A DNA stretch of 64,000 nt from Macrostomum hystrix (GCA_950097015.1 CATNEN010000039.1:18786001-18850000); one strand, 5' to 3'; shown: positions 30,883-57,227, counted from the stretch's first letter. Notes: generated by a model not told the origin, from the sequence alone. Made by a program: numbers and translations.

Positions 30883-42275
<11,393 letters not shown>

Positions 42276-43201
42276 GTTATATATTTTTCCTGCACTTCTA
42301 ACAATGATGCTTGGTGTAATTTTATTATTGCAGTTAAAGACAAACAGCAGAAATAATAATTATTTTATTTCTATGATTTAGGGAGAAAACTAAGACCCCC
42401 CGAAAATGCGGCACCGTTGGCGGACCAAAGGCTGATAATTAACAATCGTTATTACTTAATTTTAGTTTTTCCCTACAATATTAGCAAAAAATGCGTTTGA
42501 TACTACTTGCGCCGGTTTGGTTTTCGTCCCTATTTGATTGCCTGTCCGCTGTGCAACATATATTTACCTATCTCTGTCTATGTTTCGTGTCCATGTACTC
42601 CTAGTTCCGGATTGTAATTCGCATCGTTTTCTGTTTTATTAATGTGTTACTTTTTATTCAATTTAATTTCTTCTTAACTAAATTATCTATATTGCAATGA
42701 TGCGCGTGATTAAATTAAATACTTTTTTAATCATAGACACAGTTTTTTTTTAACAAAAAACATCAATTCTCTTTTGCTTTTGAATCGTCACCGTGTCTAT
42801 AAGCAATTTTTGCACCGCCAAGTCCCACCTTTGTTGTCAGTTTATTTGCTTCTTTTCTTGATCTATATATTTGCAAAAACCGTTTTTTTCGGTTTGAACT
42901 GAACATTTTCAACGTCTGTCCGTTGCCTCAGCTTGCTTCTTTGGCCCAGTTTCTGCTTTAGAGTGTAACTCCTTTAGCACTGAAAATAGATAGCATTTCA
43001 TTGGATTCATCCTGTTTTGTCTCATGAATAGGCACCCCTGTAGTGATATAGCGTATCTCTTGCATATGGAATATAGAATTTCTGGATAGCGCAAAGACTA
43101 CGTCGCATCGGTTTATTTTTTATCGGATTTCCCCTCAAATATTGCGGATTTTCATGTGTGTGATTTACCTTTGCATATCATGTAGGATTAGGACTCCCTT
43201 A

Positions 43202-43414
43202 AGGGTTTCCCTTAGAAACCTGGGGTTTCCCTTAGAAACCTGGGGTTTCCCTTAGAAACCTGGGGTTTCCCTTAGAAACCTGGGGTTTCCCTTAGAAACC
43301 TGGGGTTTCCCTTAGAAACCTGGGGTTTCCCTTAGAAACCTGGGGTTTCTCTTAGAAACCTGGGGTTTCCCTTAGAAACCTGGGGTTTCCCTTAAAAACC
43401 TGGGGTTTCCCTTA
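43202..43414. repeat. 20-bp minisatellite (GGGGTTTCCCTTAGAAACCT)n
   Basis: Directly visible, about 10 copies; internal inverted repeat GGTTTC...GAAACC. Confidence 0.95.
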
Positions 43415-44329
43415 TCGACATCGTATTTTTTTTACCTAGGTAACCCTTTCTAACCCTAGTATTTAGTTTCAGGGATTTCCTTTTTACTAAGACTTACCCT
43501 ATATGCGGGTGGGTGTGTGAAATTTAAAATGCCAAAAGACCCAGTGAACTAAATCAGCAAGGTGTGTCTCATTGTGTTGCCATGCCCGCTTGCTATTATT
43601 ACCATCGACTCATAATTTTACCAGTGTCGCGTGTGTCAATGATATTTTGTCTAAATTTTTTTTATCTTCAATTCTATTGATCATTCAATAGCTTTATTGT
43701 TTGGAGTTTCAATTTCTTGTACATAAACTAACATCTGATAAAGTTGATTAATTTAACACCTGTGCTTTTTCCTATTCTGTTCCTGTCCTCTGATATCCCA
43801 GTGTCTGTCGGTTCTGTGTAAATTCAATTAAAACAAACCTTTCAAAGGTTTGTGAGCAAATGTTTTATATCTGCATAACATAATTATTTCGCTTTAACTG
43901 TCACAGCCCCTGCCATTTACCAGCTTTGCAATTTGGCACAAAACTTTTTAGAAATTCAAATTAAATTACTTGAAAAATTGTGCTTTTCTTTTTTTAAGTC
44001 CGTTGCAAGTAATGTTTGAACCAACTGTTATACATACATATATATGCTTATATATATAAACATGCTTGTCTAATACACGCATATTATATTAAATTGACAA
44101 GTTACTGCAGTTTGAGTTCGGTCCGATCCCACCGCCCCTAGCGCGCTTCTTAACAGCAAAACACTTTCGCAAAATTAATATGACCATAAACAATTTTATT
44201 CGCTTTTTTGCTTTCTAAGCCTGATTCATTGGGTAAATAAATTGGGTAATCTGTGTGGAAATTCAACGGGAATTGGGTAATCTGAATGGAAACTAAACCG
44301 CCTTCAAAATGCACTTCAATCAACTACTC

Positions 44330-45217
44330 GAGCCCGAGCAATCTCAGCTCTTTGACGTATTGCATATATTTTCAGTCGTATTGTTATAGAACCTCTTCTG
44401 GTCGTCAATCGTAACATCCCCCAGATCAATTTTGCCATCTCGTCAGTCTCTGGTGCCTCAGCGTGATAATCACGAATCTTCTCGTAGACGGTGCAGCACC
44501 CATCGTCCACGCCACAAGATGGAGCTTGATTCCTCTGGCGATGTCCTCTGCCTTCCATCGCATTCCTTGACATTTTCTCTGTCGCAGCTTTCCTTCAGAA
44601 ATCTTCCGCTTTGCCCTTTATCAATGTCCGCTGAGTCTTTAGTCGTGAAATCTGAAGGCGCAGCTTCCTGATGGAAGCTTGCTGACGCCGATTTTTATTG
44701 CGCATAGACTTAGCCTTGGTTTTTATTGTCAGCTTTAGCGTGCGCTTGAACATTTGAGACTCGACGGGCTGCTCCTCAAACTTGTCCGACTCCAGCGATT
44801 CTGCCGAGACGTGTCCGCATAGGCTCTCTCTGATGAGCACTGGTGGGTACATGTTATCAGCCTCCTCTTCGGTACGAAGAATCACAGGCAGTAGCCCATC
44901 AGGTAGCAATCGCGGCAGCACTTTCTCTCCAGATTTGGTAGTGCATTCCGAGCTAGACGAGAACCCGGATTATTCCTCATGCCTGCAGGTGGACACGTAT
45001 ATCATTCATCGTCGAAATGCTTACTGCACAATTTTAGATCGCTTGCCCGGGTGTCTTCCAGACGGAGGTCCAGCATTTGTAACTCTAGAATCTCAATCGA
45101 TCAAGTCGCGACGGTATCGTCTTAAGGAAAGTGGTGAAGTCGAACCGTAGCTTGTTGTGCAGAGCCGAGTACACACAAGCTGCCGCAGCCAGCAGCAAAG
45201 CAAATCTTTGAGTTCAT
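44330..45217 (-). pseudogene. Degenerate P-element/THAP9-like transposase (5' part)
   Basis: From ATG 45217: MNSKICFAAGC...LHHFP*D...LCSKHFDDE*...RLARNALP is a THAP zinc finger with in-frame stops. It is followed by a basic coiled-coil-like stretch and a frameshifted RWKAEDIARGIKL motif resembling P transposases. Confidence 0.75.
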
Positions 45218-45607
45218 GAAACTTCTCGGCTTCTATGCAAGGTCAACTTTCTTTTGACCATCAATGTCGACTTCTTCGTCTGCCAAGCATTTTTCAGACT
45301 TTTCTGGCCTTACTGCAACTCACGACTCCGACCATAGACATTTGCAAAAGCGTTCCACATAGGCTAATGGAAGTGAACCATCTAGTGTATATGGGATCTG
45401 TGGCCTAATCTCAAAAGCCAGAGGAAAGATTTTCCATAGACAATAAGATCGATGGTGCCTTTGTAACAAAAATTCTGCCCCAAAGTACAAAAGAAACACG
45501 CTATGTAAGCTTGTCAGCGAATTGATGACACAACCCTCGTATAATCTCGAATAATCTGACAATCTCGTCTTTGAAGCGGCTAAAATCTGGCCTCTAATTA
45601 TCGTCAG

Positions 45608-47104
45608 GCCGGGTTGCGGTTGTCCCATCCGCGATGCCTATTGTTCTACTCGTCGATTGCGGCGCTGTGCCTCATGGTGCTCAATATTGCGCGATTTCTA
45701 AGCGGCGAATCGCTGTGGCAAGCCATCTTCCTGCCTGGTATCGACTGCCCAGACAGCAGCAAGGGTTCTCGATCGAAGGAGCGAGTCGGCCTGATCCATC
45801 ACATCGGCAAATGGACCTTCGAGGAGCCAGCCGGTCTGGCTGAATTATGTCGACGTCGCCCAGCGACTACTGGCGAGAAATTGAAGGAATCGACGCTGTC
45901 GGAACGACGAACGATTTTGGCCATTGTGCCACTAACGATTAACATGATACTGGAGCGCCGAGACATCAGGTGAGCACTGGATGACATTTTGTACATGATT
46001 GGAACAAATAATTTCCATTAACAGTAGATAGACCACGCTATTTTTCCCACTGGGAAAAGACTGGGAAAAGACTATGGCTGCAATAAAATAGTTTAATTGA
46101 CCCCATGCATCAGTGTCTGCCGTTGAGAGGCAGGATTCTATCTGCTATCTGGCTCGAAAGTAGGTCTTTACTACTGTTAACAAGACACTTATCTCTGCAT
46201 TGCTTCAGTTCACCCAGCTGTTAAATGAGTACCAGCATTAGCTGGGATAATGGAGGGTGGGTGTGGCGTCTCCCAGTCCATGGACTGAACAGAAACTTGC
46301 GAAATCTTCTCCACCAATCTTATCAGGCAGACGTGGGGCGCCGATTTGAATGGGAAATTTGGCCAGCTGTTGTTCCTAGTGCAGCTCAGCTCTGGGCAGA
46401 TTCCACCGAGCGCATTGGTCCGGGAAAATGAACTGCACCGCGACATCCTCATCGCGTACCACAGCGGGCTGAGTTCCGGTGACTCGTACAATTTCCTGGT
46501 GCGAAAAGTCCTAGCCGGCCTGAGCTGGTTTGCCAGATCCTGCAGCCAAGGCTTCGACTTTGTACTGAGAGCCGATCAGGACTCCTACTGGAATGTGCCC
46601 TCGATGGCCCGTCAACTGCGACGTCATCGGGCGTCGGACTGGTTGGCGTTTGGCGCCGTACAGCGCGGAGCCGCCGTGTCGCGCAGTTCGGCTTCGAAAT
46701 TCTTCATCTCCAAGGAGGAATATCCGGGCGATCGGTTTCCAGTCTACGTGTCTGGTGGCCCCGGCTACGCGTTGTCTAAGTCGGCCGTCGCGGCGATCGT
46801 CAGAGAAGCTTCCTCGCTGATTCCAATCTCGGGCGCATTGTGGCTGGAGGACGTGTACATCACGGGCATTCTGCCAGCGTCAGCATCCCGCTCTGGCCAC
46901 AATGGACAGAGCAGAAAGTTCCAGCATCTTCACTCTGACTATGTCTTCATCTGCCGCTACTCCAGCCTGTCGGACACAGCGGTTCTGAGTCAGCCGCCCC
47001 TGGCAATGCACAGGATGCGAGGCAGGCAGCTCAGAGCTCTGCACAGCTGGATGCAACAGACGGGCATTGCCGAGACAGCAATCAGACTGCACCGCTTCTG
47101 GTAG
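45608..47104 (+). CDS. GT31 beta-1,3-galactosyl/GlcNAc-transferase, copy 1 (no genomic ATG before the signal anchor)
   Basis: Exon 1 ends at 45969 (AG|GTGAGC); exon 2 46327-47104; the junction gives RRDIRQTWG. DxD motif in LRADQDSY, plus YVSGGPGY and WLEDVYITG; N-terminal type II TM segment. Start uncertain (see findings). Confidence 0.85.
46180..46295 (+). mobile_element. SINE body fragment in the GT31 copy 1 intron
   Basis: Matches the reverse complement of 7630-7750. Confidence 0.7.
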
Positions 47105-47275
47105 ATTCTGCGGAATCGCTTCCTGCTCAAATTAACTTAGCTTCTTGAAAATTCCTCTGTTTTATGAAACCGACAGGTGCCTTTCGAGTATTTTTCATCT
47201 TCAAATTTGTGCTTAACGGAATTGACTCGATTTCGCTTTGATTGCGAAAAAATACAAAATTTCTTCACTTTCTTA

Positions 47276-48260
47276 AGTTGGTCATTCACTCACTATGACA
47301 CTTATTAAGTTGGTCATACACTCACTATGACACCTTATGAGTCGGTCATTCACTCACTATGACCCTTTGAATATGAGTTGGTCATTCACTCACTATGACT
47401 CTTTGAATATGAGTTGGTCATTCATTCACTATGACTCTTTGAATCTGAGTTCGTCATTCACTCACTATGACTCTTTGAATATGAGTTGGTCATTCACTCA
47501 CTATGACTCTCTGAATATGAGTTGGTCATTCACTCACTATGACTCTTTGAATATGAGTTGGTCATTCACTCACTATGACTCTTTGAATATGAGTTGGTCA
47601 TGCACTCACTATGACTCTTTGAATATGAGTTGGTCATGCACTCACTATGACTCTTTGAATATGAGTTGGTCATTCACTCACTATGACTCTTTGAATATGA
47701 GTTGGTCATTCACTCACTATGACTCTTTGAATATGAGTTGGTCATTCACTCACTATGACTCTTTGAATATGAGTTGGTCATTCACTCACTATGACTCTTT
47801 GAATATGAGTTGGTCATTCACTCACTATGACTCTTTGAATATGAGTTGGTCATTCACTCACTATGACTCTTTGAATCTGAGTTGGTCATTCACTCACTAT
47901 GACTCTCTGAATCTGAGTTGGTCATTCACTCACTATGACTCTCTGAATCTGAGTTGGTCATTCACTCACTATGACCCTTTGAATATGAGTTGGTCATTCA
48001 CTCACTATGACTCTCTGAATATGAGTTGGTCATTGACTCACTATGACTCTCTGAATATGAGTTGGTCATCTACTCACTATGACTCTCTGAATCTGAGTTG
48101 GTCATTGACTTACTATGACTCTTTGAATATGAGTTGGTCATTCACTCACTATGACTCTCTGAATCTGAGTTGGTCATTCACTCACTATGACCCTTTGAAT
48201 CTGAGTTGGTCATTCACTCATTATGACTCTCTGAATCTGAGTTGGTCATTGACTTACTTA
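47276..48260. repeat. 36-bp minisatellite (GAGTTGGTCATTCACTCACTATGACTCTTTGAATAT)n
   Basis: Directly visible; no spacers; internal GTCAT...ATGAC inverted repeat. Confidence 0.97.
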
Positions 48261-48675
48261 CCATTGGAAAAATGAGTTAGTCATTGACCCTATAGAACAC
48301 ATTGAACTTGACAATTAGTCACTGTGCTCATTACAATGTGAGTTGGTTAATCACTAATTGATAAAAGATGACTCCGTTAGCGGTCACGTAGCAACTAGGA
48401 TTAAAAAAGGAGACATAAAAAGGATTTTTACAGCGGCAAGAGAAAAACACTAAAGCCTGTACGATCGATAAAATTTCTGAAAAGGCAGAAGAGAAAAAAA
48501 TAGAAAAAAGGATTGACTAGCTCAAAGATAAACTGAGATTATAGAAAATAGCAACATCAAAAATAGGCTAAAAAAACAAAATACAATAGAAAATGAAACA
48601 CGAGACACAAAACACAATACATAACAATTCTCTCATAGACAATTACAGACTAGACTATATACAACTATAGACTAT

Positions 48676-50205
48676 ATCCGGAAAGTAGTGTTACGAGCGT
48701 ACTATTACTCGGTGCGGACGTGTGGAAAGTTGCACTGGCATGAGTTTGGTGTCATTTGAAAGCGGCAAGTCTCTTCTTTAAAATGGCACCAATTGCAAGA
48801 GATTTGAATATGTGCTTCAAGAGATATGGACAATTAAGTAGAGAAAGGTCGGTCATGTATTAGATCATGGATGTTTAATGCGCACTCTATAGGGTTAGAA
48901 AGTCCGAGGCTGCATTTGATGGTCACGAGGCGAGCGAAGCAAGCCGAGGACCATTAAGTGTGGCCGAGGACTTTTTACCATAGAATGCACATTAAACTAC
49001 CGTGATCTTATATGAAATCCGAATTGCTTATTTTTGTTTTGTTTTGCTTATCTTCCTCTTGAGCCGCGCCGAATGCGGTGCAGCCAACGGGAGTGTCGGG
49101 GCAAAGCCCCCACATTGGAACCATAGACAAATTTTCCATAAATTTAAGACAGTATTAGCTAGACGAAATCCGAATTACTTTGTTTTGTAGCTTTCTCTTA
49201 AACCACGTGTCCGCGATGGAAGAAGAATTTGATAGCGACAATGCTGTCTATTACTGACCACGGAGTCAAGTCTATCATCATTGATCGAGCTAAAATCGAA
49301 ATTCAGTTTAAGTGAGTTTGTGAAACGTTTAATGCACTGCCTATTATTGAAAGAAACTCAATATGTTTCCTATATATTCCTTCCAATTGTCTATAGGTTT
49401 GCTAGAAAATTGTCTTTTTGTCTCTTCGTTAAACAGCATGTAATTCCTGTTATTCTTGTTGCATTTAAATAGACTGTTTAGTTCTGTTTAGTCTATGGTT
49501 CAAACTGCTTTCATTTCGTGACCATCAAATGAAATGAGAGGGGCTGCCTCAGAAAACTAAGACCGCAGTTGCTGTTCCTGCAAATCTCGATGGACACTCG
49601 ATTTTCAATCATCGATCATCCATCTGTACATTGCACATCCATCTGTAAAATGGATGTGCATTCCAAGACTGGGCAGCGACACTTTGCCATCTTTACACGT
49701 CGGAGCTCCGGGAGAAAATCGGCTGAGATCTACAGGCAACTTTGCACTGCTCATGGCGACCATGCTGTCAGCAAGATGACAGTAAGCAGGTGGGTGGGCG
49801 AGTTTCAAGCCGGAAGAAGGTCAGGAGGGTGATCCTGCTGCACCAGATTCCGAGAAATCTGTTCGCAGACGCCATCGACAAGATGCGAGACCGATGGGAG
49901 AAGTGCGTCATGTCTGGTGGTGACTTCGTTGAGAAGACAACTCTGGCTGTTAAACGATAAGTGATTTTAGCGTTATTTGCTTGAATAACAATATTTTGCT
50001 TGTTATCACCTGTTATCACCTGTTTCTTACTGTACTTTTGTTGTGTTGCTTGGATTTTCTTGGAGTGATTAACCAAAGTTTTCTGCAGACACAGCTTGTG
50101 AAAGTCTATGACCGACCTTTCTCTACTTAATTGTCCATTTTGCAAGTGCAACTTTCCATACGTCCACACCGAGTAATAGTAACACTACTTTCTAAACGCC
50201 CCTCG
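48676..50205 (+). mobile_element. Non-autonomous, internally deleted mariner with long TIRs and a nested palindromic insert
   Basis: Right end ...CTTTCTAAACGCCCCTCG-TA. About 100 bp of inverted homology between 48680-48856 and 50108-50193. 49630-49960 encodes a mariner HTH (SAEIYRQL...TVSRWVGEFQAGR) fused to the C-terminus (RWEKCVMSGGDFVEK) with the DDD domain missing. Absent at the paralogous site near 57154. Confidence 0.85.
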
Positions 50206-50297
50206 TACGAGCTAAAATATCTCAGTATTTCACAACTGCGTCTTGCTTTGATATTAGGGCACACACATAAATTTGGGAGATTCGATCAGAATAGCAG

Positions 50298-51220
50298 AGG
50301 GTGTCAGACACTTTCTTAAGATGCCAGATGATTCCTCAGGGTGTCAGACACTTTCTTAAGATACCAGATGATTCCTCAGGGTGTCAGACACTTTCTTAAG
50401 ATGCCAGATGATTCCTCAGGGTGTCAGACACTTTCTTAAGATGCCAGATGATTCCTCAGGGTGTCAGACACTTTCTTAAAATGCCAGATGATTCCTCAGG
50501 GTGTCAGAGACACTTTCTTAAGATGCCAGATGATTCCTCAGGGTGTCAGACACTTTCTTAAGATGCCAGATGATTCCTCAGGGTGTCAGACACTTTCTTA
50601 AGATGCCAGATGATTCCTCAGGGTGTCAGACAATTTCTTAAGATGCCAGATGATTCCTCAGGGTGTCAGACACTTTCTTAAAATGCCAGATGATTCCTCA
50701 GGGTGTCAGAGACACTTTCTTAAGATGCCAGATGATTCCTCAGGGTGTCAGACACTTTCTTAAGATGCCAGATGATTCCTCAGGGTGTCAGACACTTTCT
50801 TAAGATGCCAGATGATTCCTCAGGGTGTCAGACACTTTCTTAAAATGCCAGATGATTCCTCAGGGTGTCAGAGACACTTTCTTAAGATGCCAGATGATTC
50901 CTCAGGGTGTCAGACACTTTCTTAAGATGCCAGATGATTCCTCAGGGTGTCAGACACTTTCTTAAGATGCCAGATGATTCCTCAGGGTGTCAGACACTTT
51001 CTTAAGATGCCAGATGATTCCTCAGGGTGTCAGACACTTTCTTAAGATGCCAGATGATTCCTCAGGGTGTCAGAGACACTTTCTTAAGATGCCAGATGAT
51101 TCCTCAGGGTGTCAGACACTTTCTTAAGATGCCAGATGATTCCTCAGGGTGTCAGACACTTTCTTAAGATGCCAGATGATTCCTCAGGGTGTCAGACAGT
51201 TCTTGAGGGTGTCAGGGTGT
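50298..51220. repeat. 40-bp minisatellite (CAGGGTGTCAGACACTTTCTTAAGATGCCAGATGATTCCT)n, about 22 copies
   Basis: Directly visible. Confidence 0.97.
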
Positions 51221-51308: not shown

Positions 51309-51494
51309 TTAGACGTCGCCATCACCTTGACCATGACGCTTCAGAAGATTGATGTCATGCTTAACCTTCAGGTGGTTGTGCAGGCCACTTGTTGATCCAC
51401 CAGCACAAGCAAAGGTCTTGTGGCACAAGTTGCACTTGGTATTAAATTCCGGGTTTTCCATTGACATCTTCGCGTTAATGCTTTCACACACCAT
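51309..51494 (-). pseudogene. BED zinc-finger fragment of a hAT transposase
   Basis: KCNLCHKTFACAGGSTSGLHNHLKVKH fits the zf-BED C-x2-C...TSxLxxHLxxxH pattern; no catalytic domain follows. Confidence 0.7.
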
Positions 51495-52301
51495 CAGCTT
51501 TGAAGCTAGAAAACTTCATATTCAGAATGCAATATCGTATGCTTTTAGATCGTATGGATTGAGCTACCGAGTATTGGGAACAGACTGCCAAACAAGCATA
51601 CAGACTAATTTTCTCAATCTTTTTCCCAGTTAAACCGCCCAAATACGAGTATAAATCATGAAGTTGCAACATGCCCATAAGCTCCCGTCCCTTGCGTAGA
51701 TGCAGTAAATACAGTACAGTAAATACAAAACAGTAATACAGTAACTCACTCACTATACATTGACAATGAGATGTTCCTTGTGGAAATCGGCTGTACGGAT
51801 TGGATTGGACTAGCTAGATCAAATCTTGAACAGTAGCCACCTCAACTGTCTGTCCATCATGTACATTGATTCACTGAATATTAGTATTGAGTACAATACA
51901 GGCACGGAAGGCAGGGAGGGGAGGGCTAAAATCTGGGAGGGGATGGAAAACTCTCTCCTAGAAGATGGTCGGTGTACGACACGGTTGAAATGAAAAGTAC
52001 ACTTCATTAGTGCTGCCAATACCGAAGCGTTTCGTCACTCGGTCAGTACTTTGTTCCTTCAGCCTGTCTGCTGCCTCCCCTACACCCAACCCTAGCCCAA
52101 CGTTAGCTTCCCTCCTATAAGCAAACAAAAGTCCTCTGCGCGATCCTCTTCTGAGACTGACTGCAGGCTTGTGAAAGTGAGTTATCATCAGGGCATCACG
52201 GCGGACCAGACTATATATATATAACTTAGCAATGATCTTGGAAATCTCGTCTATAAATCGGCTAAAATCTGGCCTCTAATTATCGTTGGGTCGGGTTGCG
52301 G

Positions 52302-53786
52302 ATGTGCCGTCCGCGATGCCTATTGTTCTACTCGTCGATTGCGGCGCTGTGCCTCATGGTGCTCAATATTGCTCAATTTCTAAGCGGCGAATCGCTGTGG
52401 CAAGCCATCTTCCTGCCTGGTATCGACTGCCCAGACAGCAGCAAGGTTTCTCGATCGAAGGAGCGAGTCGGCCTGATCCGTCACATCGGCAACTGGACCT
52501 TCGAGGAGCCAGCGGGTCTGGCTGAATTATGTCGACGTCGCCCAGCGACTACTGGCGAGAAATTGAAGGAATCGACGCTGTCGGAACGACGAACGATTTT
52601 GGCCATTGTGCCACTAACGATTAACATGATACTGGAGCGCCGAGACATCAGGTGAGCACTGGATGACATTTTGTACATGATTGGAACAAATAATTTCCAT
52701 TAACAGTAGATAGACCACGCTATTTTTCCCACTGGGAAAAGACTGGAAAAAGACTATGGCTGCAATAAAATAGTTTAATTGACCCCATGCATCAGTGTCT
52801 GCCGTTGAGAGGCAGGATTCTATCTGCTATCTGGCTCGAAAGTAGGTCTTTACTACTGTTAACAAGACACTTATCTCTGCATTGCTTCAGTTCACCCAGC
52901 TGTTAAATGAGTACCAGCATTAGCTGGGATAATGGAGGGTGGGTGTGGCGTCTCCCAGTCCATGGACTGAACAGAAACTTGCGAAATCTTCTCCACCAAT
53001 CTTATCAGGCAGACGTGGGGCGCCGATTTGAATGGGAAATTTGGCCAGCTGTTGTTCCTAGTGCAGCTCAGCTCTGGGCAGATTCCACCGAGCGCATTGG
53101 TCCGGGAAAATGAACTGCACCGCGACATCCTCATCGCGTACCACAGCGGGCTGAGTTCCGGTGACTCGTACAATTTCCTGGTGCGAAAAGTCCTAGCTGG
53201 CCTGAGCTGGTTTGCCAGATCCTGCAGCCAAGGCTTCGACTTTGTACTGAGAGCCGATCAGGACTCCTACTGGAATGTGCCCTCGATGGCCCGTCAACTG
53301 CGACGTCATCGGGCGTCGGACTGGTTGGCGTTTGGCGCCGTACAGCGCGGAGCCGCCGTGTCGCGCAGTTCGGCTTCGAAATTCTTCATCTCCAAGGAGG
53401 AATATCCGGGCGATCGGTTTCCAGTCTACGTGTCTGGTGGCCCCGGCTACGCGTTGTCTAAGTCGGCCGTCGCGGCGATCGTCAGAGAAGCTTCCTCGCT
53501 GATTCCAATCTCGGGCGCATTGTGGCTGGAGGACGTGTACATCACGGGCATTCTGCCAGCGTCAGCATCCCGCTCTGGCCACAATGGACAGAGCAGAAAG
53601 TTCCAGCATCTTCACTCTGACTATGTCTTCATCTGCCGCTACTCCAGCCTGTCGGACACAGCGGTTCTGAGTCAGCCGCCCCTGGCAATGCACAGGATGC
53701 GAGGCAGGCAGCTCAGAGCTCTGCACAGCTGGATGCAACAGACGGGCATTGCCGAGACAGCAATCAGACTGCACCGCTTCTGGTAG
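52302..53786 (+). CDS. GT31 beta-1,3-galactosyl/GlcNAc-transferase, copy 2
   Basis: ATG 52302 (MCRPRCLLFYSSIAALCLMVL); exon 1 to 52651, exon 2 53009-53786; exon 2 protein identical to copy 1. Confidence 0.9.
52862..52977 (+). mobile_element. SINE body fragment in the GT31 copy 2 intron
   Basis: Duplicate of 46180-46295. Confidence 0.7.
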
Positions 53787-53964: not shown

Positions 53965-55412
53965 AAGTTGGTCATTCACTCACTATGACACTTATTAAGT
54001 TGGTCATACACTCACTATGACTCTTTGAATATGAGTTGGTCATTCACTCACTATGACACTTAATGAGTTGGTCATTCACTCACTAAGACTCTTTGAATAT
54101 GAGTTGGTCATTCACTCACTATGACTCTTTGAATATGAGTTGGTTATTCAGTAAATTAAAGATAGTACGAGTATTATAATTTTAGTCTAGGTTTAATGCT
54201 TTTGGTCCCAAATAAATTGGGAACATTATGCCGAAAAAAGAAATTTATTTTATGAAATAAAAACTTTATGAAATAACGAGCACAGATTTAATAATTAGGG
54301 TCTCAAAGCTCTAGTGGAACAGACAGGTGGTGCTACACTCAAATTTTCAGATCAGTGTAAAAAGGCTAAACAAAATTCGTCGTCAAAAAGAGAAAGAGAA
54401 AAAATAACAATGAAACATTAGTTTTGTTATAACTATGATGATTTCAACAATAATCAGAAGAAGGCTTGTACTTATGAATTAACTATAAAATAGTACTCAT
54501 TGGTCATGGAATCACTGACTCTCTGAATCTGAGTTGGTCATTCACTCACTATGACCCTTTGAATATGAGTTGGTCATTCACTCACTATGACTCTTTGAAT
54601 ATGAGTTGGTCATTCACTCACTATGACCCTTTGAATATGAGTTGGTCATTCACTCACTATGACTCTTTGAATATGAGTTGGTCATTCACTCACTATGACC
54701 CTTTGAATATGAGTTGGTCATTCACTCACTATGACCCTTTGAATATGAGTTGGTCATTCACTCACTATGACTCTCTGAATCTGAGTTGGTCATTCACTCA
54801 CTATGACCCTTTGAATATGAGTTGGTCATTCACTCACTATGACTCTTTGAATATGAGTTGGTCATTCACTCACTATGACTCTTTGAATATGAGTTGGTCA
54901 TTCACTCACTATGACTCTCTGAATCTGAGTTGGTCATTCACTCACTATGACCCTTTGAATATGAGTTGGTCATTCACTCACTATGACTCTTTGAATATGA
55001 GTTGGTCATTCACTCACTATGACCCTTTGAATATGAGTTGGTCATTCACTCACTATGACTCTTTGAATCTGAGTTGGTCATTCACTCACTATGACCCTTT
55101 GAATATGAGTTGGTCATTCACTCACTATGACCCTTTGAATATGAGTTGGTCATTCACTCACTATGACCCTTTGAATATGAGTTGGTCATTCACTCACTAT
55201 GACTCTCTGAATCTGAGTTGGTCATTCACTCACTATGACCCTTTGAATATGAGTTGGTCATTCACTCACTATGACTCTTTGAATATGAGTTGGTCATTCA
55301 CTCACTATGACTCTTTGAATATGAGTTGGTCATTCACTCACTATGACTCTCTGAATCTGAGTTGGTCATTCACTCACTATGACTCTCTGAATCTGAGTTG
55401 GTCATTGACTTA
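53965..55412. repeat. 36-bp minisatellite (same unit as 47276-48260) interrupted by a ~370-bp AT-rich insert at ~54149-54518
   Basis: Directly visible. Confidence 0.95.
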
Positions 55413-55736
55413 CTTACCATTGGAAAAATGAGTTAGTCATTGACCCTATAGAACACATTGAACTTGACAATTAGTCACTGTGCTCATTACAATGTGAGTT
55501 GGTTAATCACTTGATAAAATATGACTCCGTGAGCGGTCACGTAGCAACTAGGATTAAAAAAGGAGACATTAAAAGAGGATTTTAACAGCGGCAAGAGAAA
55601 AACACTAAAGCCTGTACGATCGATAAAATTTCTGAAAAGGCAGAAGAGAAAAAAATAGAAAAAAGGATTGACTAGCTCAAAGCAAAACTGAGATTATAGA
55701 AAATAGCAACATCAAAAATAGGCTAAAAACAAAATA

Positions 55737-57075
55737 CGAGGGCTATCCCAGAAATAAGTTTCGCTGCATTATAAATTTTCTAAGTACATTTTTGGCTAAC
55801 GCGGTTAGTTATTCCTGAATCTATATGTCTATGGCAAAAGGCACCAAAAGTTTTAAAGCAAATGCAGTCTCACAAGCTGCAGGACATCAAGTTAAACACA
55901 GCTTCGTTTGCAAAGATGGCCACTTCGCTGTGGCCATGTCTTAGTTTAAACATCATCAAGTTTTCAGTTTTGGCTGCCAAATCAACATCAGAGATTCACG
56001 AAGAGCTTGGACAAGTTCTGAAAGAAGATGCTCCATCAATTCAAACGGTTCGGAAATGGGTCCGCGAAGTTCAAGGAGGCAGGCTGTCGATGGAAGACAA
56101 AGAGCGGTCTGGAAGGCCAAGAACAGCCACCACTGATGCAAATGCAGAGCGTGTCAGAGCTGCAGTCACTTTTGACAGCAGATTGACTTGCAATGAGATC
56201 GAGGACCTCCTGGACATTCCTCACAGCACAGTGCATCGCATTCTTACTGAGCAGCTGAAACATGCAGAAGATCTTCGCAAAGTGGGTGCCTCATCTCCTG
56301 ACTGAGGACCAAATGAAGGAGAGGGTGACCCTGGCGCAAGAGCACCTTCGACGATTTAATCGAGAGGGAAGCAACTTTCTCAGCAGAATTGTGACAGGAG
56401 ACGAGACATGGGTCTACGAGTGGGATCCTGAGCTCAAGCGCCAGTCAGCACAGTGGCTTCCAAGGGGATCAGCGAGTCCTGAGAAGGTTCAACGGAAGCA
56501 GAGCTCCTTGAAGGTGATGCACATAGTCTTCTTTGACATCCATGGGGTCCTGGTGGACTGGCCAGTGCCAATCAGCACCAAGGTGAATGCAGAATATTAC
56601 CGATGGGTACAGCAAGAAAAATTGAGGCCAGCCATCAGGAAAAAGCGGCCTGGTTCGCTGGAGAGAGGCGTGCTTTTTCACAACGACAACGCACCTGTGC
56701 ACCGCGCCAGAAGAGTGGAGGAGCTCCTGGAGTCCTGGAACTGGGAGGTCCTGGCACAGCCACGCTATTCACCTGATTTGGCTCCAGCGGACTTCTATAT
56801 ATTTCCCAGAATGAAGGAGAGCATTCGTGGACAACGTTTTGCCTCTGTGGAGCAGATTAACAACAATGCTTCATCAGCTTTGCGGCATCTGGCCACCGGC
56901 GGCTGCGATGCTGCCTTTCAAGCGTGGGTACGGCGCTGGCAAAAGTGCGTGGACCTTGGCGGCAAATTTGTGGAGTAACTATGACCTGTTTTGACTACTG
57001 TTAAAGTTTTAAGACTTTCCTTCAAACTGTTCGCTTTTTATTGTTGACCGAAACTTACTTTTGGGATAGCCCTCG
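55737..57075 (+). mobile_element. Full-length mariner (DD34D) transposon; transposase broken by one frameshift
   Basis: TIRs CGAGGGCTATCCCAGAAATAAGTTTCG / CGAAACTTACTTTTGGGATAGCCCTCG with TA TSD. Empty site CAAAATACAATAG at ~48582 in the paralogous copy. Motifs RSGRP, WVPH, TGDETW, HNDNA-x-YSPDLAPAD with 34 residues between the 2nd and 3rd Asp. Confidence 0.97.
55917..56978 (+). pseudogene. Mariner transposase, +1 frameshift at ~56261
   Basis: ORFs 55862-56305 (HTH) and 56262-56978 (catalytic) join if one base is removed from CTGAAACATG. Confidence 0.9.
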
Positions 57076-57227
57076 TACAATAGAAAATGAAACACGAGAC
57101 ACAAAACACAAGACATAACAAATCTCTCATAGACAATTACAGACTAGACTATATACGAGCTAAAATATCTCAGCGTGCTTTGATATTAGCGCACACACAT
57201 AAATTAGGGAGATTCTCAGAATAACAG

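What the first reader, a model, noticed from the sequence alone, without database searches (positions are those of the whole stretch)
45580..45680. GT31 copy 1 may take its initiator Met from a spliced leader; copy 2 has its own ATG
Seen: copy 1 reads CTCTAATTATCGTCAG|GCC GGG TTG CGG TTG TCC CAT. That gives a branch-like CTAAT and an AG acceptor at 45606-07 in phase 0 with the ORF, an in-frame TAA upstream at 45581, and no ATG until 45674, near the end of the signal anchor. Copy 2 reads CTCTAATTATCGTTGG GTC GGG TTG CGG ATG: no AG, but an ATG at 52302. The two differences are reciprocal. Established: flatworm spliced leaders end in AUG, which can act as the initiator. Inference: trans-splicing gives MAGLRLSHPRCLLF... 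for copy 1, so two sister paralogs would use different initiation mechanisms.
Basis: partly seen in the sequence, partly recalled or inferred. Interest (0 to 1): 0.85.

Follow-up and report, generated by a model that had tools for sequence, protein, structure and literature searches.

The report
Start-less GT31 gene copy, rescue unproven
One of three near-identical galactosyltransferase gene copies in the flatworm Macrostomum hystrix has lost its own start codon and gained an in-frame splice acceptor just upstream, so the worm's AUG-ending spliced leader could supply the start, but no RNA data could be laid on it and a decaying duplicate explains it at least as well.

Summary
Copy 1 has TAA at 45581-83, CAG at 45605-07 in phase 0 with the ORF, TTG where its relatives have ATG, and its first in-frame ATG at 45674. 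Copy 2 has ATG at 52302 and no AG.

The genome is Macrostomum hystrix. Its spliced leader (SL) ends in ATG directly before a GTAAG donor, so the premise holds.

A third copy on contig C3 and a 59%-identical paralog on C1 both have their own ATG. Copy 1's state is therefore derived: CGG>CAG and ATG>TTG.

Copy 1 also lacks the >=1 kb upstream flank that copies 2 and 3 share. Two dispersed repeats abut it instead. It carries 6 nonsynonymous and 1 synonymous private changes in exon 1. From 45833 to 47104 it is nearly identical to copy 2, consistent with gene conversion, so its intact ORF says little about selection.

My odds: decaying or non-productive duplicate about 0.40; SL-AUG initiation about 0.33; another start about 0.17.

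The mechanism has been known since 2006. Other notes in this scan already report it in this genome at RFC4, PIPOX and DTWD1.

The parts
44518..45403 (.). Dispersed repeat A upstream of copy 1. Other genomic copies vary in length and all end at the same right-hand edge, a LINE-like 5'-truncation pattern if the element is + oriented.
   Evidence: matches to query positions 419-1304, 779-1303, 973-1308, 1085-1303 and 1165-1307 of window 44100-45560. No Pfam domain in its ORFs.
45404..45545 (.). Dispersed repeat B, about 140 nt, with 30 or more copies in the genome. It abuts copy 1's retained flank and ends in TATAAT (45540-45545).
   Evidence: No Rfam family matches.
45505..45509 (+). Consensus donor-like GTAAG inside repeat B, 100 nt upstream of the candidate acceptor. 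It could compete with trans-splicing by defining a cis intron. The phase-0 frame before it holds no ATG.
45561..45607 (+). The only ancestral 5' flank that copy 1 retains. Homology with copies 2 and 3 starts here.
45575..45576 (+). Second copy-1-specific AG, from T>G at 45576. An SL joined here would read a 6-codon upstream ORF ending at TAA 45595-97, so the site is not productive.
45581..45583 (+). In-frame TAA closing the ORF upstream. It is present in all three copies.
45606..45607 (+). Candidate SL acceptor AG (context CGTCAG|GCC) in phase 0. It was created by a copy-1-specific CpG transition, CGG>CAG.
45608..45969 (+). Copy 1 exon 1 under the SL model. It encodes the cytoplasmic tail, the signal anchor (CLLFYSSIAALCLMVLNIARFL) and the stem. 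The donor is cag|GTGAGC at 45970.
45620..45622 (+). TTG at the position of the family's ATG. The start codon has been lost.
45674..45676 (+). First in-frame genomic ATG. It lies inside the signal anchor, so starting here would cut the anchor.
45970..46326 (+). Intron, GTGAGC...TTATCAG.
46327..47104 (+). Copy 1 exon 2 with its stop codon. It encodes the GT31 catalytic domain (Galactosyl_T, with a DQD motif). The protein is identical to copy 2's.
45833..47104 (+). Tract nearly identical between copies 1 and 2 (2 differences in 1272 nt). The flanks diverge by 5.5% on the 5' side and 4.1% on the 3' side. I infer gene conversion.
   Evidence: Fisher p = 3e-10 and 9e-6
51344..52242 (+). Upstream flank of copy 2. 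It is shared with copy 3 on contig C3 at 96% identity and is absent upstream of copy 1.
52252..52258 (+). TATAAAT made by two copy-2-specific substitutions, 50 nt before copy 2's ATG.
52302..52651 (+). Copy 2 exon 1, starting at its own ATG.
53009..53786 (+). Copy 2 exon 2 with its stop codon.

Best explanation
Copy 1 is the derived, 5'-truncated member of a three-copy GT31 (beta-1,3-galactosyltransferase-like) gene family in Macrostomum hystrix. It keeps only 59 nt of the ancestral flank before the old start. Beyond that flank lie two dispersed repeats instead of the >=1 kb upstream region shared by copies 2 and 3. Its own ATG has mutated to TTG.

Most likely it is a young duplicate that no longer makes the full-length enzyme by normal initiation, so it is either decaying or expressed without a productive start. 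Its 379-codon ORF still looks perfect because the copy is young and because 45833-47104 appears to have been overwritten by gene conversion with copy 2. On this reading the in-frame CAG at 45605-07 is a chance CpG transition, one of three such G>A changes private to copy 1.

Shown: the anatomy, the direction of the changes, the loss of the flank, and the near-identical tract. Inferred: lack of productive translation, and gene conversion as the cause of the tract.
For: - Direction of change: copy 3 and the 59%-identical paralog on contig C1 (exon-1 ORF MMHCRVV...) both have their own ATG. Copy 3 has CGG where copy 1 has CAG.
- Flank loss: homology of copy 1 with copy 2 starts at 45561. Copies 2 and 3 share 51344-52242 plus a 40-nt minisatellite. 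Repeats A and B occupy 44518-45545.
- Substitutions private to copy 1 in the coding part: 6 nonsynonymous (M>L, C>S, R>H, Q>R, R>H, N>K) and 1 synonymous. Copies 2 and 3 together have 6 nonsynonymous and 10 synonymous downstream of their ATG. My own hypergeometric tail on these counts gives one-sided p about 0.045.
- Near-identical tract: 15 differences in 272 nt versus 2 in 1272 nt.
- Acceptor quality: CGTCAG does not fit [T/C]TNCAG (PMC8629364). The pyrimidine tract is interrupted by G at -5.
- Only 10-20% of M. hystrix genes are SL trans-spliced (PMC10468722).
Against: - There is no frameshift or stop anywhere in copy 1.
- Both private flank substitutions create AGs, one of them in frame and stop-free, with p about 0.03 by chance.
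- Four runs whose contig totals (43-48 million letters) look like transcriptomes hold 0.70-0.77 of the sampled words of 45560-47110. The expectation is 0.634 if only spliced copy-2 and copy-3 mRNA is present and 0.714-0.746 if copy-1 mRNA is present. Retained intron from copy 2 could also explain the excess.
- Other notes in this scan report SL-AUG donation elsewhere in this genome (I did not check them).
Confidence: 0.4

Rival explanations
1. Copy 1 is transcribed from upstream, by read-through or from a repeat-derived promoter. Its pre-mRNA is SL trans-spliced at the new CAG (45605-07). The SL's terminal AUG, now the 5'-most AUG and in phase 0, starts a protein MAGLRLSHPRCLLF... with an intact type II signal anchor. 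A plausible order of events is: flank loss, then gain of the acceptor, then neutral loss of the now redundant ATG four codons downstream.
For: - The SL is present in exact form at 23 or more places, and SL RNA genes read ...TTGCATG|GTAAG with an Sm-like site.
- PMC10468722 itself notes that the SL probably carries the start codon.
- The phase-0 AG is derived, and both private flank changes make AGs.
- The resulting N-terminus keeps arginines before the anchor.
- The word share fits copy-1 mRNA.
- Within 3.2 kb upstream, no ATG-bearing exon ends in phase 0 at a GT[AG]AG donor.
Against: - There is no RNA evidence at all.
- The acceptor lies outside the common motif.
- A competing AG sits at 45575-76, and a GTAAG donor at 45505 could turn the site into a cis acceptor.
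- The promoter flank is missing.
- The 6:1 nonsynonymous excess points to relaxed constraint.
- The same two mutations are about equally improbable whether or not the copy is functional.
Confidence: 0.33
2. Copy 1 makes protein from another start. Candidates are the near-cognate CUG at 45587 (A at -3, G at +4, in frame after the TAA), the UUG at 45614 or 45620, the AUG at 45674 (giving a protein with a cut anchor), or an upstream cis exon spliced to the AG at 45606-07.
For: - The CTG at 45587 has the best near-cognate context and is in frame.
- Non-AUG initiation is widely documented (PMC9851317).
- The AG could equally serve as a cis acceptor.
Against: - Near-cognate starts are inefficient (general knowledge).
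- Starting at 45674 removes half of the signal anchor.
- No phase-0 ATG...GT[AG]AG first exon exists in 42400-45605. Only weak GT[AG] donors qualify.
- The frame before GTAAG 45505 has no ATG.
Confidence: 0.17

Closest known systems
Flatworm SL 3'-terminal AUG used as initiator methionine (Cheng, Cohen, Ndegwa & Davis 2006, J Biol Chem 281:733; 'slORFs', PMC9851317)
   Same: The SL ends in AUG directly before the donor. The candidate acceptor is in phase 0 with an ORF that has no genomic ATG after the last in-frame stop.
   Different: No SL-joined transcript has been shown here. The gene's closest paralogs keep their own ATG. The acceptor is a single recent point mutation in a former 5' UTR.
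SL-AUG cases reported elsewhere in this genome by this scan (RFC4, three PIPOX paralogs, DTWD1/TMEM42)
   Same: Same organism, same SL, same anatomy: a phase-0 acceptor and no ATG.
   Different: Those are conserved genes in which the start-less state is the only one. For RFC4 and PIPOX, assembled RNA was reported to show the junction, which I did not check. Here only one young duplicate of three is start-less, and there is no RNA.
GT31 beta-1,3-galactosyltransferases, e.g. human B3GALT5 (PDB 8zwp)
   Same: Pfam Galactosyl_T matches at 3e-20. phmmer to B3GALT5 gives 6e-15. The RxxIRxTW-like motif spans the exon junction, a DxD motif (DQD) is present, and the layout is type II with a signal anchor.
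   Different: This is a fast-evolving lineage-specific family. Two billion-scale protein collections gave no significant relative apart from one marginal exon-1 hit. The acceptor substrate is unknown.
Young unprocessed (duplicated) pseudogene kept similar to its functional neighbour by gene conversion (general concept, from my own knowledge)
   Same: Loss of the start codon and of the promoter flank, an excess of nonsynonymous changes outside the converted tract, and near-identity inside it.
   Different: There are no frameshifts or stops, and silence or lack of function has not been shown.

Membership tests
SL-AUG-initiated flatworm mRNA (slORF) | The organism's SL exon ends in AUG immediately before the GU donor. 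| tested here: met
   ...CAATTTATTGCATG|GTAAGACACCG, followed by an Sm-like ATATTTTTAG and a hairpin. The sequence is taken from PMC8629364.
SL-AUG-initiated flatworm mRNA (slORF) | No genomic in-frame ATG between the last upstream in-frame stop and the conserved N-terminus. | tested here: met
   TAA at 45581, first in-frame ATG at 45674.
SL-AUG-initiated flatworm mRNA (slORF) | An AG acceptor in phase 0 directly before the ORF, with acceptor-like context. | tested here: inconclusive
   The AG and its phase are met. The context CGTCAG misses the T at -5 of [T/C]TNCAG, a motif found at 44% of M. lignano SL sites. By my count on the sequence, 11 of 17 bases at -20..-4 are pyrimidines.
SL-AUG-initiated flatworm mRNA (slORF) | Transcripts carry the SL joined at that acceptor. 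| not testable with these tools
No transcript-derived proteins were found.
SL-AUG-initiated flatworm mRNA (slORF) | Translation starts at the SL AUG. | not testable with these tools
   This needs ribosome profiling or N-terminal proteomics.
GT31 glycosyltransferase | Galactosyl_T domain (PF01762) scoring above the curated cut-off. | tested here: met
   73.3 bits against a cut-off of 23. B3GALT5 at 6e-15.
GT31 glycosyltransferase | N-terminal signal anchor (type II) and a DxD motif. | tested here: met
   Read from the translations: CLLFYSSIAALCLMVLNIARFL and LRADQDSYW. No topology predictor was run.
Unprocessed pseudogene / decaying duplicate | Disabling lesions: loss of the start, stops, or frameshifts. 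| tested here: inconclusive
   The start codon is lost, but there is no stop or frameshift in 379 codons.
Unprocessed pseudogene / decaying duplicate | Relaxed constraint compared with its paralogs. | tested here: inconclusive
   6 nonsynonymous to 1 synonymous in copy 1, against 6 to 10 in copies 2 and 3 together, counted downstream of their ATG. One-sided p is about 0.045 by my own calculation. Within the same 225 nt the comparison is only 2 to 2.
Unprocessed pseudogene / decaying duplicate | No expression or no translation. | not testable with these tools

The most novel reading that the evidence does not exclude
A gene duplicate that lost its promoter flank was rescued by a single point mutation that made a new SL acceptor. 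After that, its own ATG decayed. Two paralogs 6.7 kb apart would then start translation by different mechanisms: a freshly caught hand-over of the start codon from the gene to the spliced leader.
Probability: 0.3. Interest if true: 0.5.

Novelty: new member of a known kind. Interest (0 to 1): 0.33.

Why it matters
If RNA data confirm the junction, this locus would show step by step how a gene comes to depend on the SL for its start codon. The ancestral state is still visible next door (copy 2) and on another contig (copy 3). It would also suggest how SL trans-splicing lets promoter-less duplicates survive.

It has a practical side as well. The published annotation pipeline trimmed the SL but kept its ATG on the reads (PMC10468722), so start-less genes like this one may be annotated with a truncated N-terminus.

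If the junction is absent, the locus is an ordinary young decaying duplicate. It would then be a warning that an in-frame AG upstream of a start-less ORF is not enough to infer SL-AUG use.

Tried and rejected
The own-genome search started at 44100, and where scripts scanned that region I used a copy of the window with those places masked by N. I take no view on what the places are.
- The search for homologous proteins with the exon-2 peptide gave no hit.
- The search of protein representatives with the exon-1 peptide gave one hit, at E = 6.5e-4. So there are no orthologs and no transcript-derived ORFs to compare.
- The supplements of PMC10468722 hold no per-locus SL calls and nothing on this gene.
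- The scan for an upstream cis exon (ATG...phase 0...GT[AG]AG) in 42400-45605 found none. Only weak donors qualify.
- Rfam finds nothing in 44100-46000, so repeat B could not be classed as a tRNA-type or 7SL-type SINE.
- I rejected the idea that the CTAAT motif is a feature evolved for splicing, because it is identical in all three copies.
- I rejected a simple tandem duplication with shared junctions. Copy 2's upstream flank recurs at copy 3, but it recurs neither before copy 1 nor after copy 2.
- The spliced model was searched exon by exon, by reference. The joined protein was never sent to any search tool. Exons were joined only inside a local script to count codon changes.

Full report
**1. 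What is there**

The quoted bases are all correct.
- In copy 1 the frame reads *NLASNYRQ|AGLRLSHPRCLLFYSSIAALCLMVLNIARFL....
- TAA lies at 45581-83 and CAG at 45605-07, so an exon starting at 45608 is in phase 0.
- TTG lies at 45620-22. The first in-frame ATG is at 45674, in the middle of the hydrophobic anchor.
- Copy 2 reads *NLASNYRWVGLRMCRPRCLLF..., with ATG at 52302 and no AG in the flank.

The gene has two exons. In copy 1 these are 45608-45969 and 46327-47104, with donor cag|GTGAGC and acceptor ttatcag|G. Exon 2 is a GT31 domain: Pfam Galactosyl_T at 3e-20, with human B3GALT5 as the nearest solved structure at 6e-15. Searches were made exon by exon, by reference. The joined protein was not sent to any search tool.

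**2. Organism and spliced leader**

The window's assembly has 220,453,370 bases in 42 contigs. These are exactly the figures for Macrostomum hystrix in Table 1 of PMC10468722.

The 35-nt Macrostomum SL given in PMC8629364 occurs without mismatch at 23 or more places in the genome. Two loci read in full show ...CAATTTATTGCATG|GTAAGACACCG, followed by an Sm-like site and a hairpin. So the SL ends in AUG directly at the donor.

[quoted passage not shown] It estimates that 10-20% of genes are trans-spliced. Use of the SL AUG as initiator is established for Schistosoma (Cheng et al. 2006, as summarised in PMC9851317 and PMC12582326).

**3. Direction of the changes**

A third copy lies on contig C3. 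It reads *NLASNYRRAGSRMCRPRC, with ATG present and CGG instead of CAG. A more distant paralog on contig C1, 59% identical in exon 2, also has its own ATG.

The ancestral state is therefore 'own ATG, no AG'. Copy 1 acquired CGG>CAG and ATG>TTG.

**4. Architecture**

- Homology between copies 1 and 2 runs from 45561/52243 through the gene and a 36-nt minisatellite to 48662/57156. A mariner-type insertion interrupts it after copy 2.
- Copies 2 and 3 share at least a further 0.9 kb of upstream flank plus a 40-nt minisatellite.
- That flank is absent before copy 1. There, a repeat whose genomic copies share one end occupies 44518-45403, and a roughly 140-nt dispersed repeat occupies 45404-45545.
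- Copy 1 thus keeps only 59 nt before its former ATG.

**5. Substitution pattern**

| Region | Private to copy 1 | Private to copy 2 | Private to copy 3 |
|---|---|---|---|
| 45561-45832 | 9 | 6 | 3 |
| 45833-47104 | 0 | 1 | about 19 |

- Copies 1 and 2 differ at 15 of 272 positions in the 5' part, at 2 of 1272 in the tract, and at 7 of 171 in the 3' flank (Fisher p = 3e-10 and 9e-6). This fits a gene-conversion tract covering most of the coding region. Copy 1's intact 379-codon ORF therefore carries little weight as evidence of selection.
- In the unconverted part, copy 1 has 6 nonsynonymous changes (M>L, C>S, R>H, Q>R, R>H, N>K) and 1 synonymous.
- Copies 2 and 3 together have 6 nonsynonymous and 10 synonymous changes downstream of their ATG. 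My own hypergeometric calculation gives one-sided p about 0.045. Within the same 225 nt the comparison is only 2 to 2, so this is weak.

**6. Is the AG more than chance?**

The reconstructed ancestral 55-nt flank had no AG. Copy 1 has two private flank substitutions, and both create an AG:
- 45576 T>G gives gaag|CGG. It is out of frame and leads to a 6-codon upstream ORF.
- 45606 G>A gives the in-frame CAG.

By enumeration, a random substitution creates an AG with p about 0.15-0.19 and an in-frame, stop-free AG with p about 0.06. Both substitutions doing so has p about 0.02-0.03. This hints at selection for an acceptor. However, the test was chosen after seeing the data, and 45606 is a CpG transition, as are two other private changes.

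The mutations must also arise by chance under either hypothesis. They are tolerated both in a dead gene and in an SL-rescued one, so they discriminate only mildly.

**7. Acceptor quality and competitors**

- At M. lignano SL acceptors the enriched motif is [T/C]TNCAG, found at 44% of sites. Copy 1 has CGTCAG.
- A consensus GTAAG lies at 45505, 100 nt upstream. It could make 45505-45607 a cis intron in transcripts that start further upstream. The phase-0 frame before it has no ATG.
- No ATG-bearing phase-0 first exon with a GT[AG]AG donor exists within 3.2 kb upstream.

**8. Expression**

The only RNA-related datum is indirect. Four runs of one study hold 0.70-0.77 of the 146 sampled words of 45560-47110. 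Their contig totals of 43-48 million letters look like transcriptomes, which is my inference.

| Scenario | Expected share of words |
|---|---|
| Only spliced copy-2 and copy-3 mRNA | 0.634 |
| Copy-1 mRNA also present | 0.714-0.746 |
| Copy-2 or copy-3 sequence with intron included | up to 0.87 |

The observed values fit copy-1 mRNA. Partial intron retention from copy 2 would fit as well.

Laying the reads failed. Afterwards I worked beside those places and sent none of their letters to any search.

**9. Verdict**

| Reading | Probability |
|---|---|
| Young decaying or non-productive duplicate | about 0.40 |
| SL-AUG initiation at 45608 | about 0.33 |
| Other start (CUG 45587, UUG, AUG 45674, cis exon) | about 0.17 |
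| Unassigned | remainder |

Earlier notes of this scan report SL-AUG donation at other loci of this genome: RFC4, PIPOX and DTWD1/TMEM42 (I did not check them). Even if true here, this would be one more member of a known kind. Its added interest would be that the ancestral ATG-bearing state survives in the neighbouring paralog.

Noticed in passing
G000:C39:12667884-12685526 (L061 186-290 and 531-649): A tandem array with a period of about 927 nt and at least 20 units. It alternates a 5S rRNA gene (Rfam RF00001, 118 bits) with a second SL-RNA-like gene. That gene's leader differs in its 3' part (...GAAGACTCTCTTTTTTGCATG|GTAAGACACCG) and is followed by an Sm-like GTATTTTTGA and a hairpin. It looks like a 5S-linked SL variant that also ends in ATG. 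The genome paper's text and SL table, as far as I read them, give one SL sequence per species.
   Followed up: partly
e.g. G000:C8:3485170-3485204 (L063 60-105), 15 or more places in G000: An SL-like head (GCCGTAAAGACGGTCTCTTACGGCGAAGGCTCAATTTATTGCATA) sits at the start of a dispersed repeat. It may be a retroelement or a family of retrocopies that captured the SL.
   Followed up: no
window 32880-32940: The Groucho/TLE gene's conserved N-terminus ([23 protein letters not shown]) begins directly after a strong acceptor, ttttcttag|GTG, at 32908. An in-frame TAG lies just before it and there is no genomic ATG until 32938. This is another candidate for an SL-donated or upstream-exon AUG.
   Followed up: partly
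window 52252-52258: Two copy-2-specific substitutions turn TTTGAAT into TATAAAT, 50 nt before copy 2's ATG. Each copy has remodelled its 5' end in its own way.
   Followed up: no
window 45833-47104 versus 52515-53786: A sharply bounded tract, nearly identical between copies 1 and 2, lies between flanks that diverge by 4-5.5%. I infer gene conversion.
   Followed up: yes
window 55737-57076 and 48662-50206: A mariner/Tc1-type transposon with HTH and DDE domains and nearly intact ORFs is inserted downstream of copy 2. An insertion containing a Mos1-type transposase HTH fragment lies at the matching place downstream of copy 1.
   Followed up: partly
window 47180-48380, 53966-55450, 50298-51204, 38000-42200: Long minisatellites with periods of 36, 40, 16, 20 and 30 nt flank the GT31 copies and the Groucho gene. 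The 36-nt one carries a 290-312-codon open frame that is probably meaningless.
   Followed up: no
I did not examine them further and sent them to no search.
   Followed up: no
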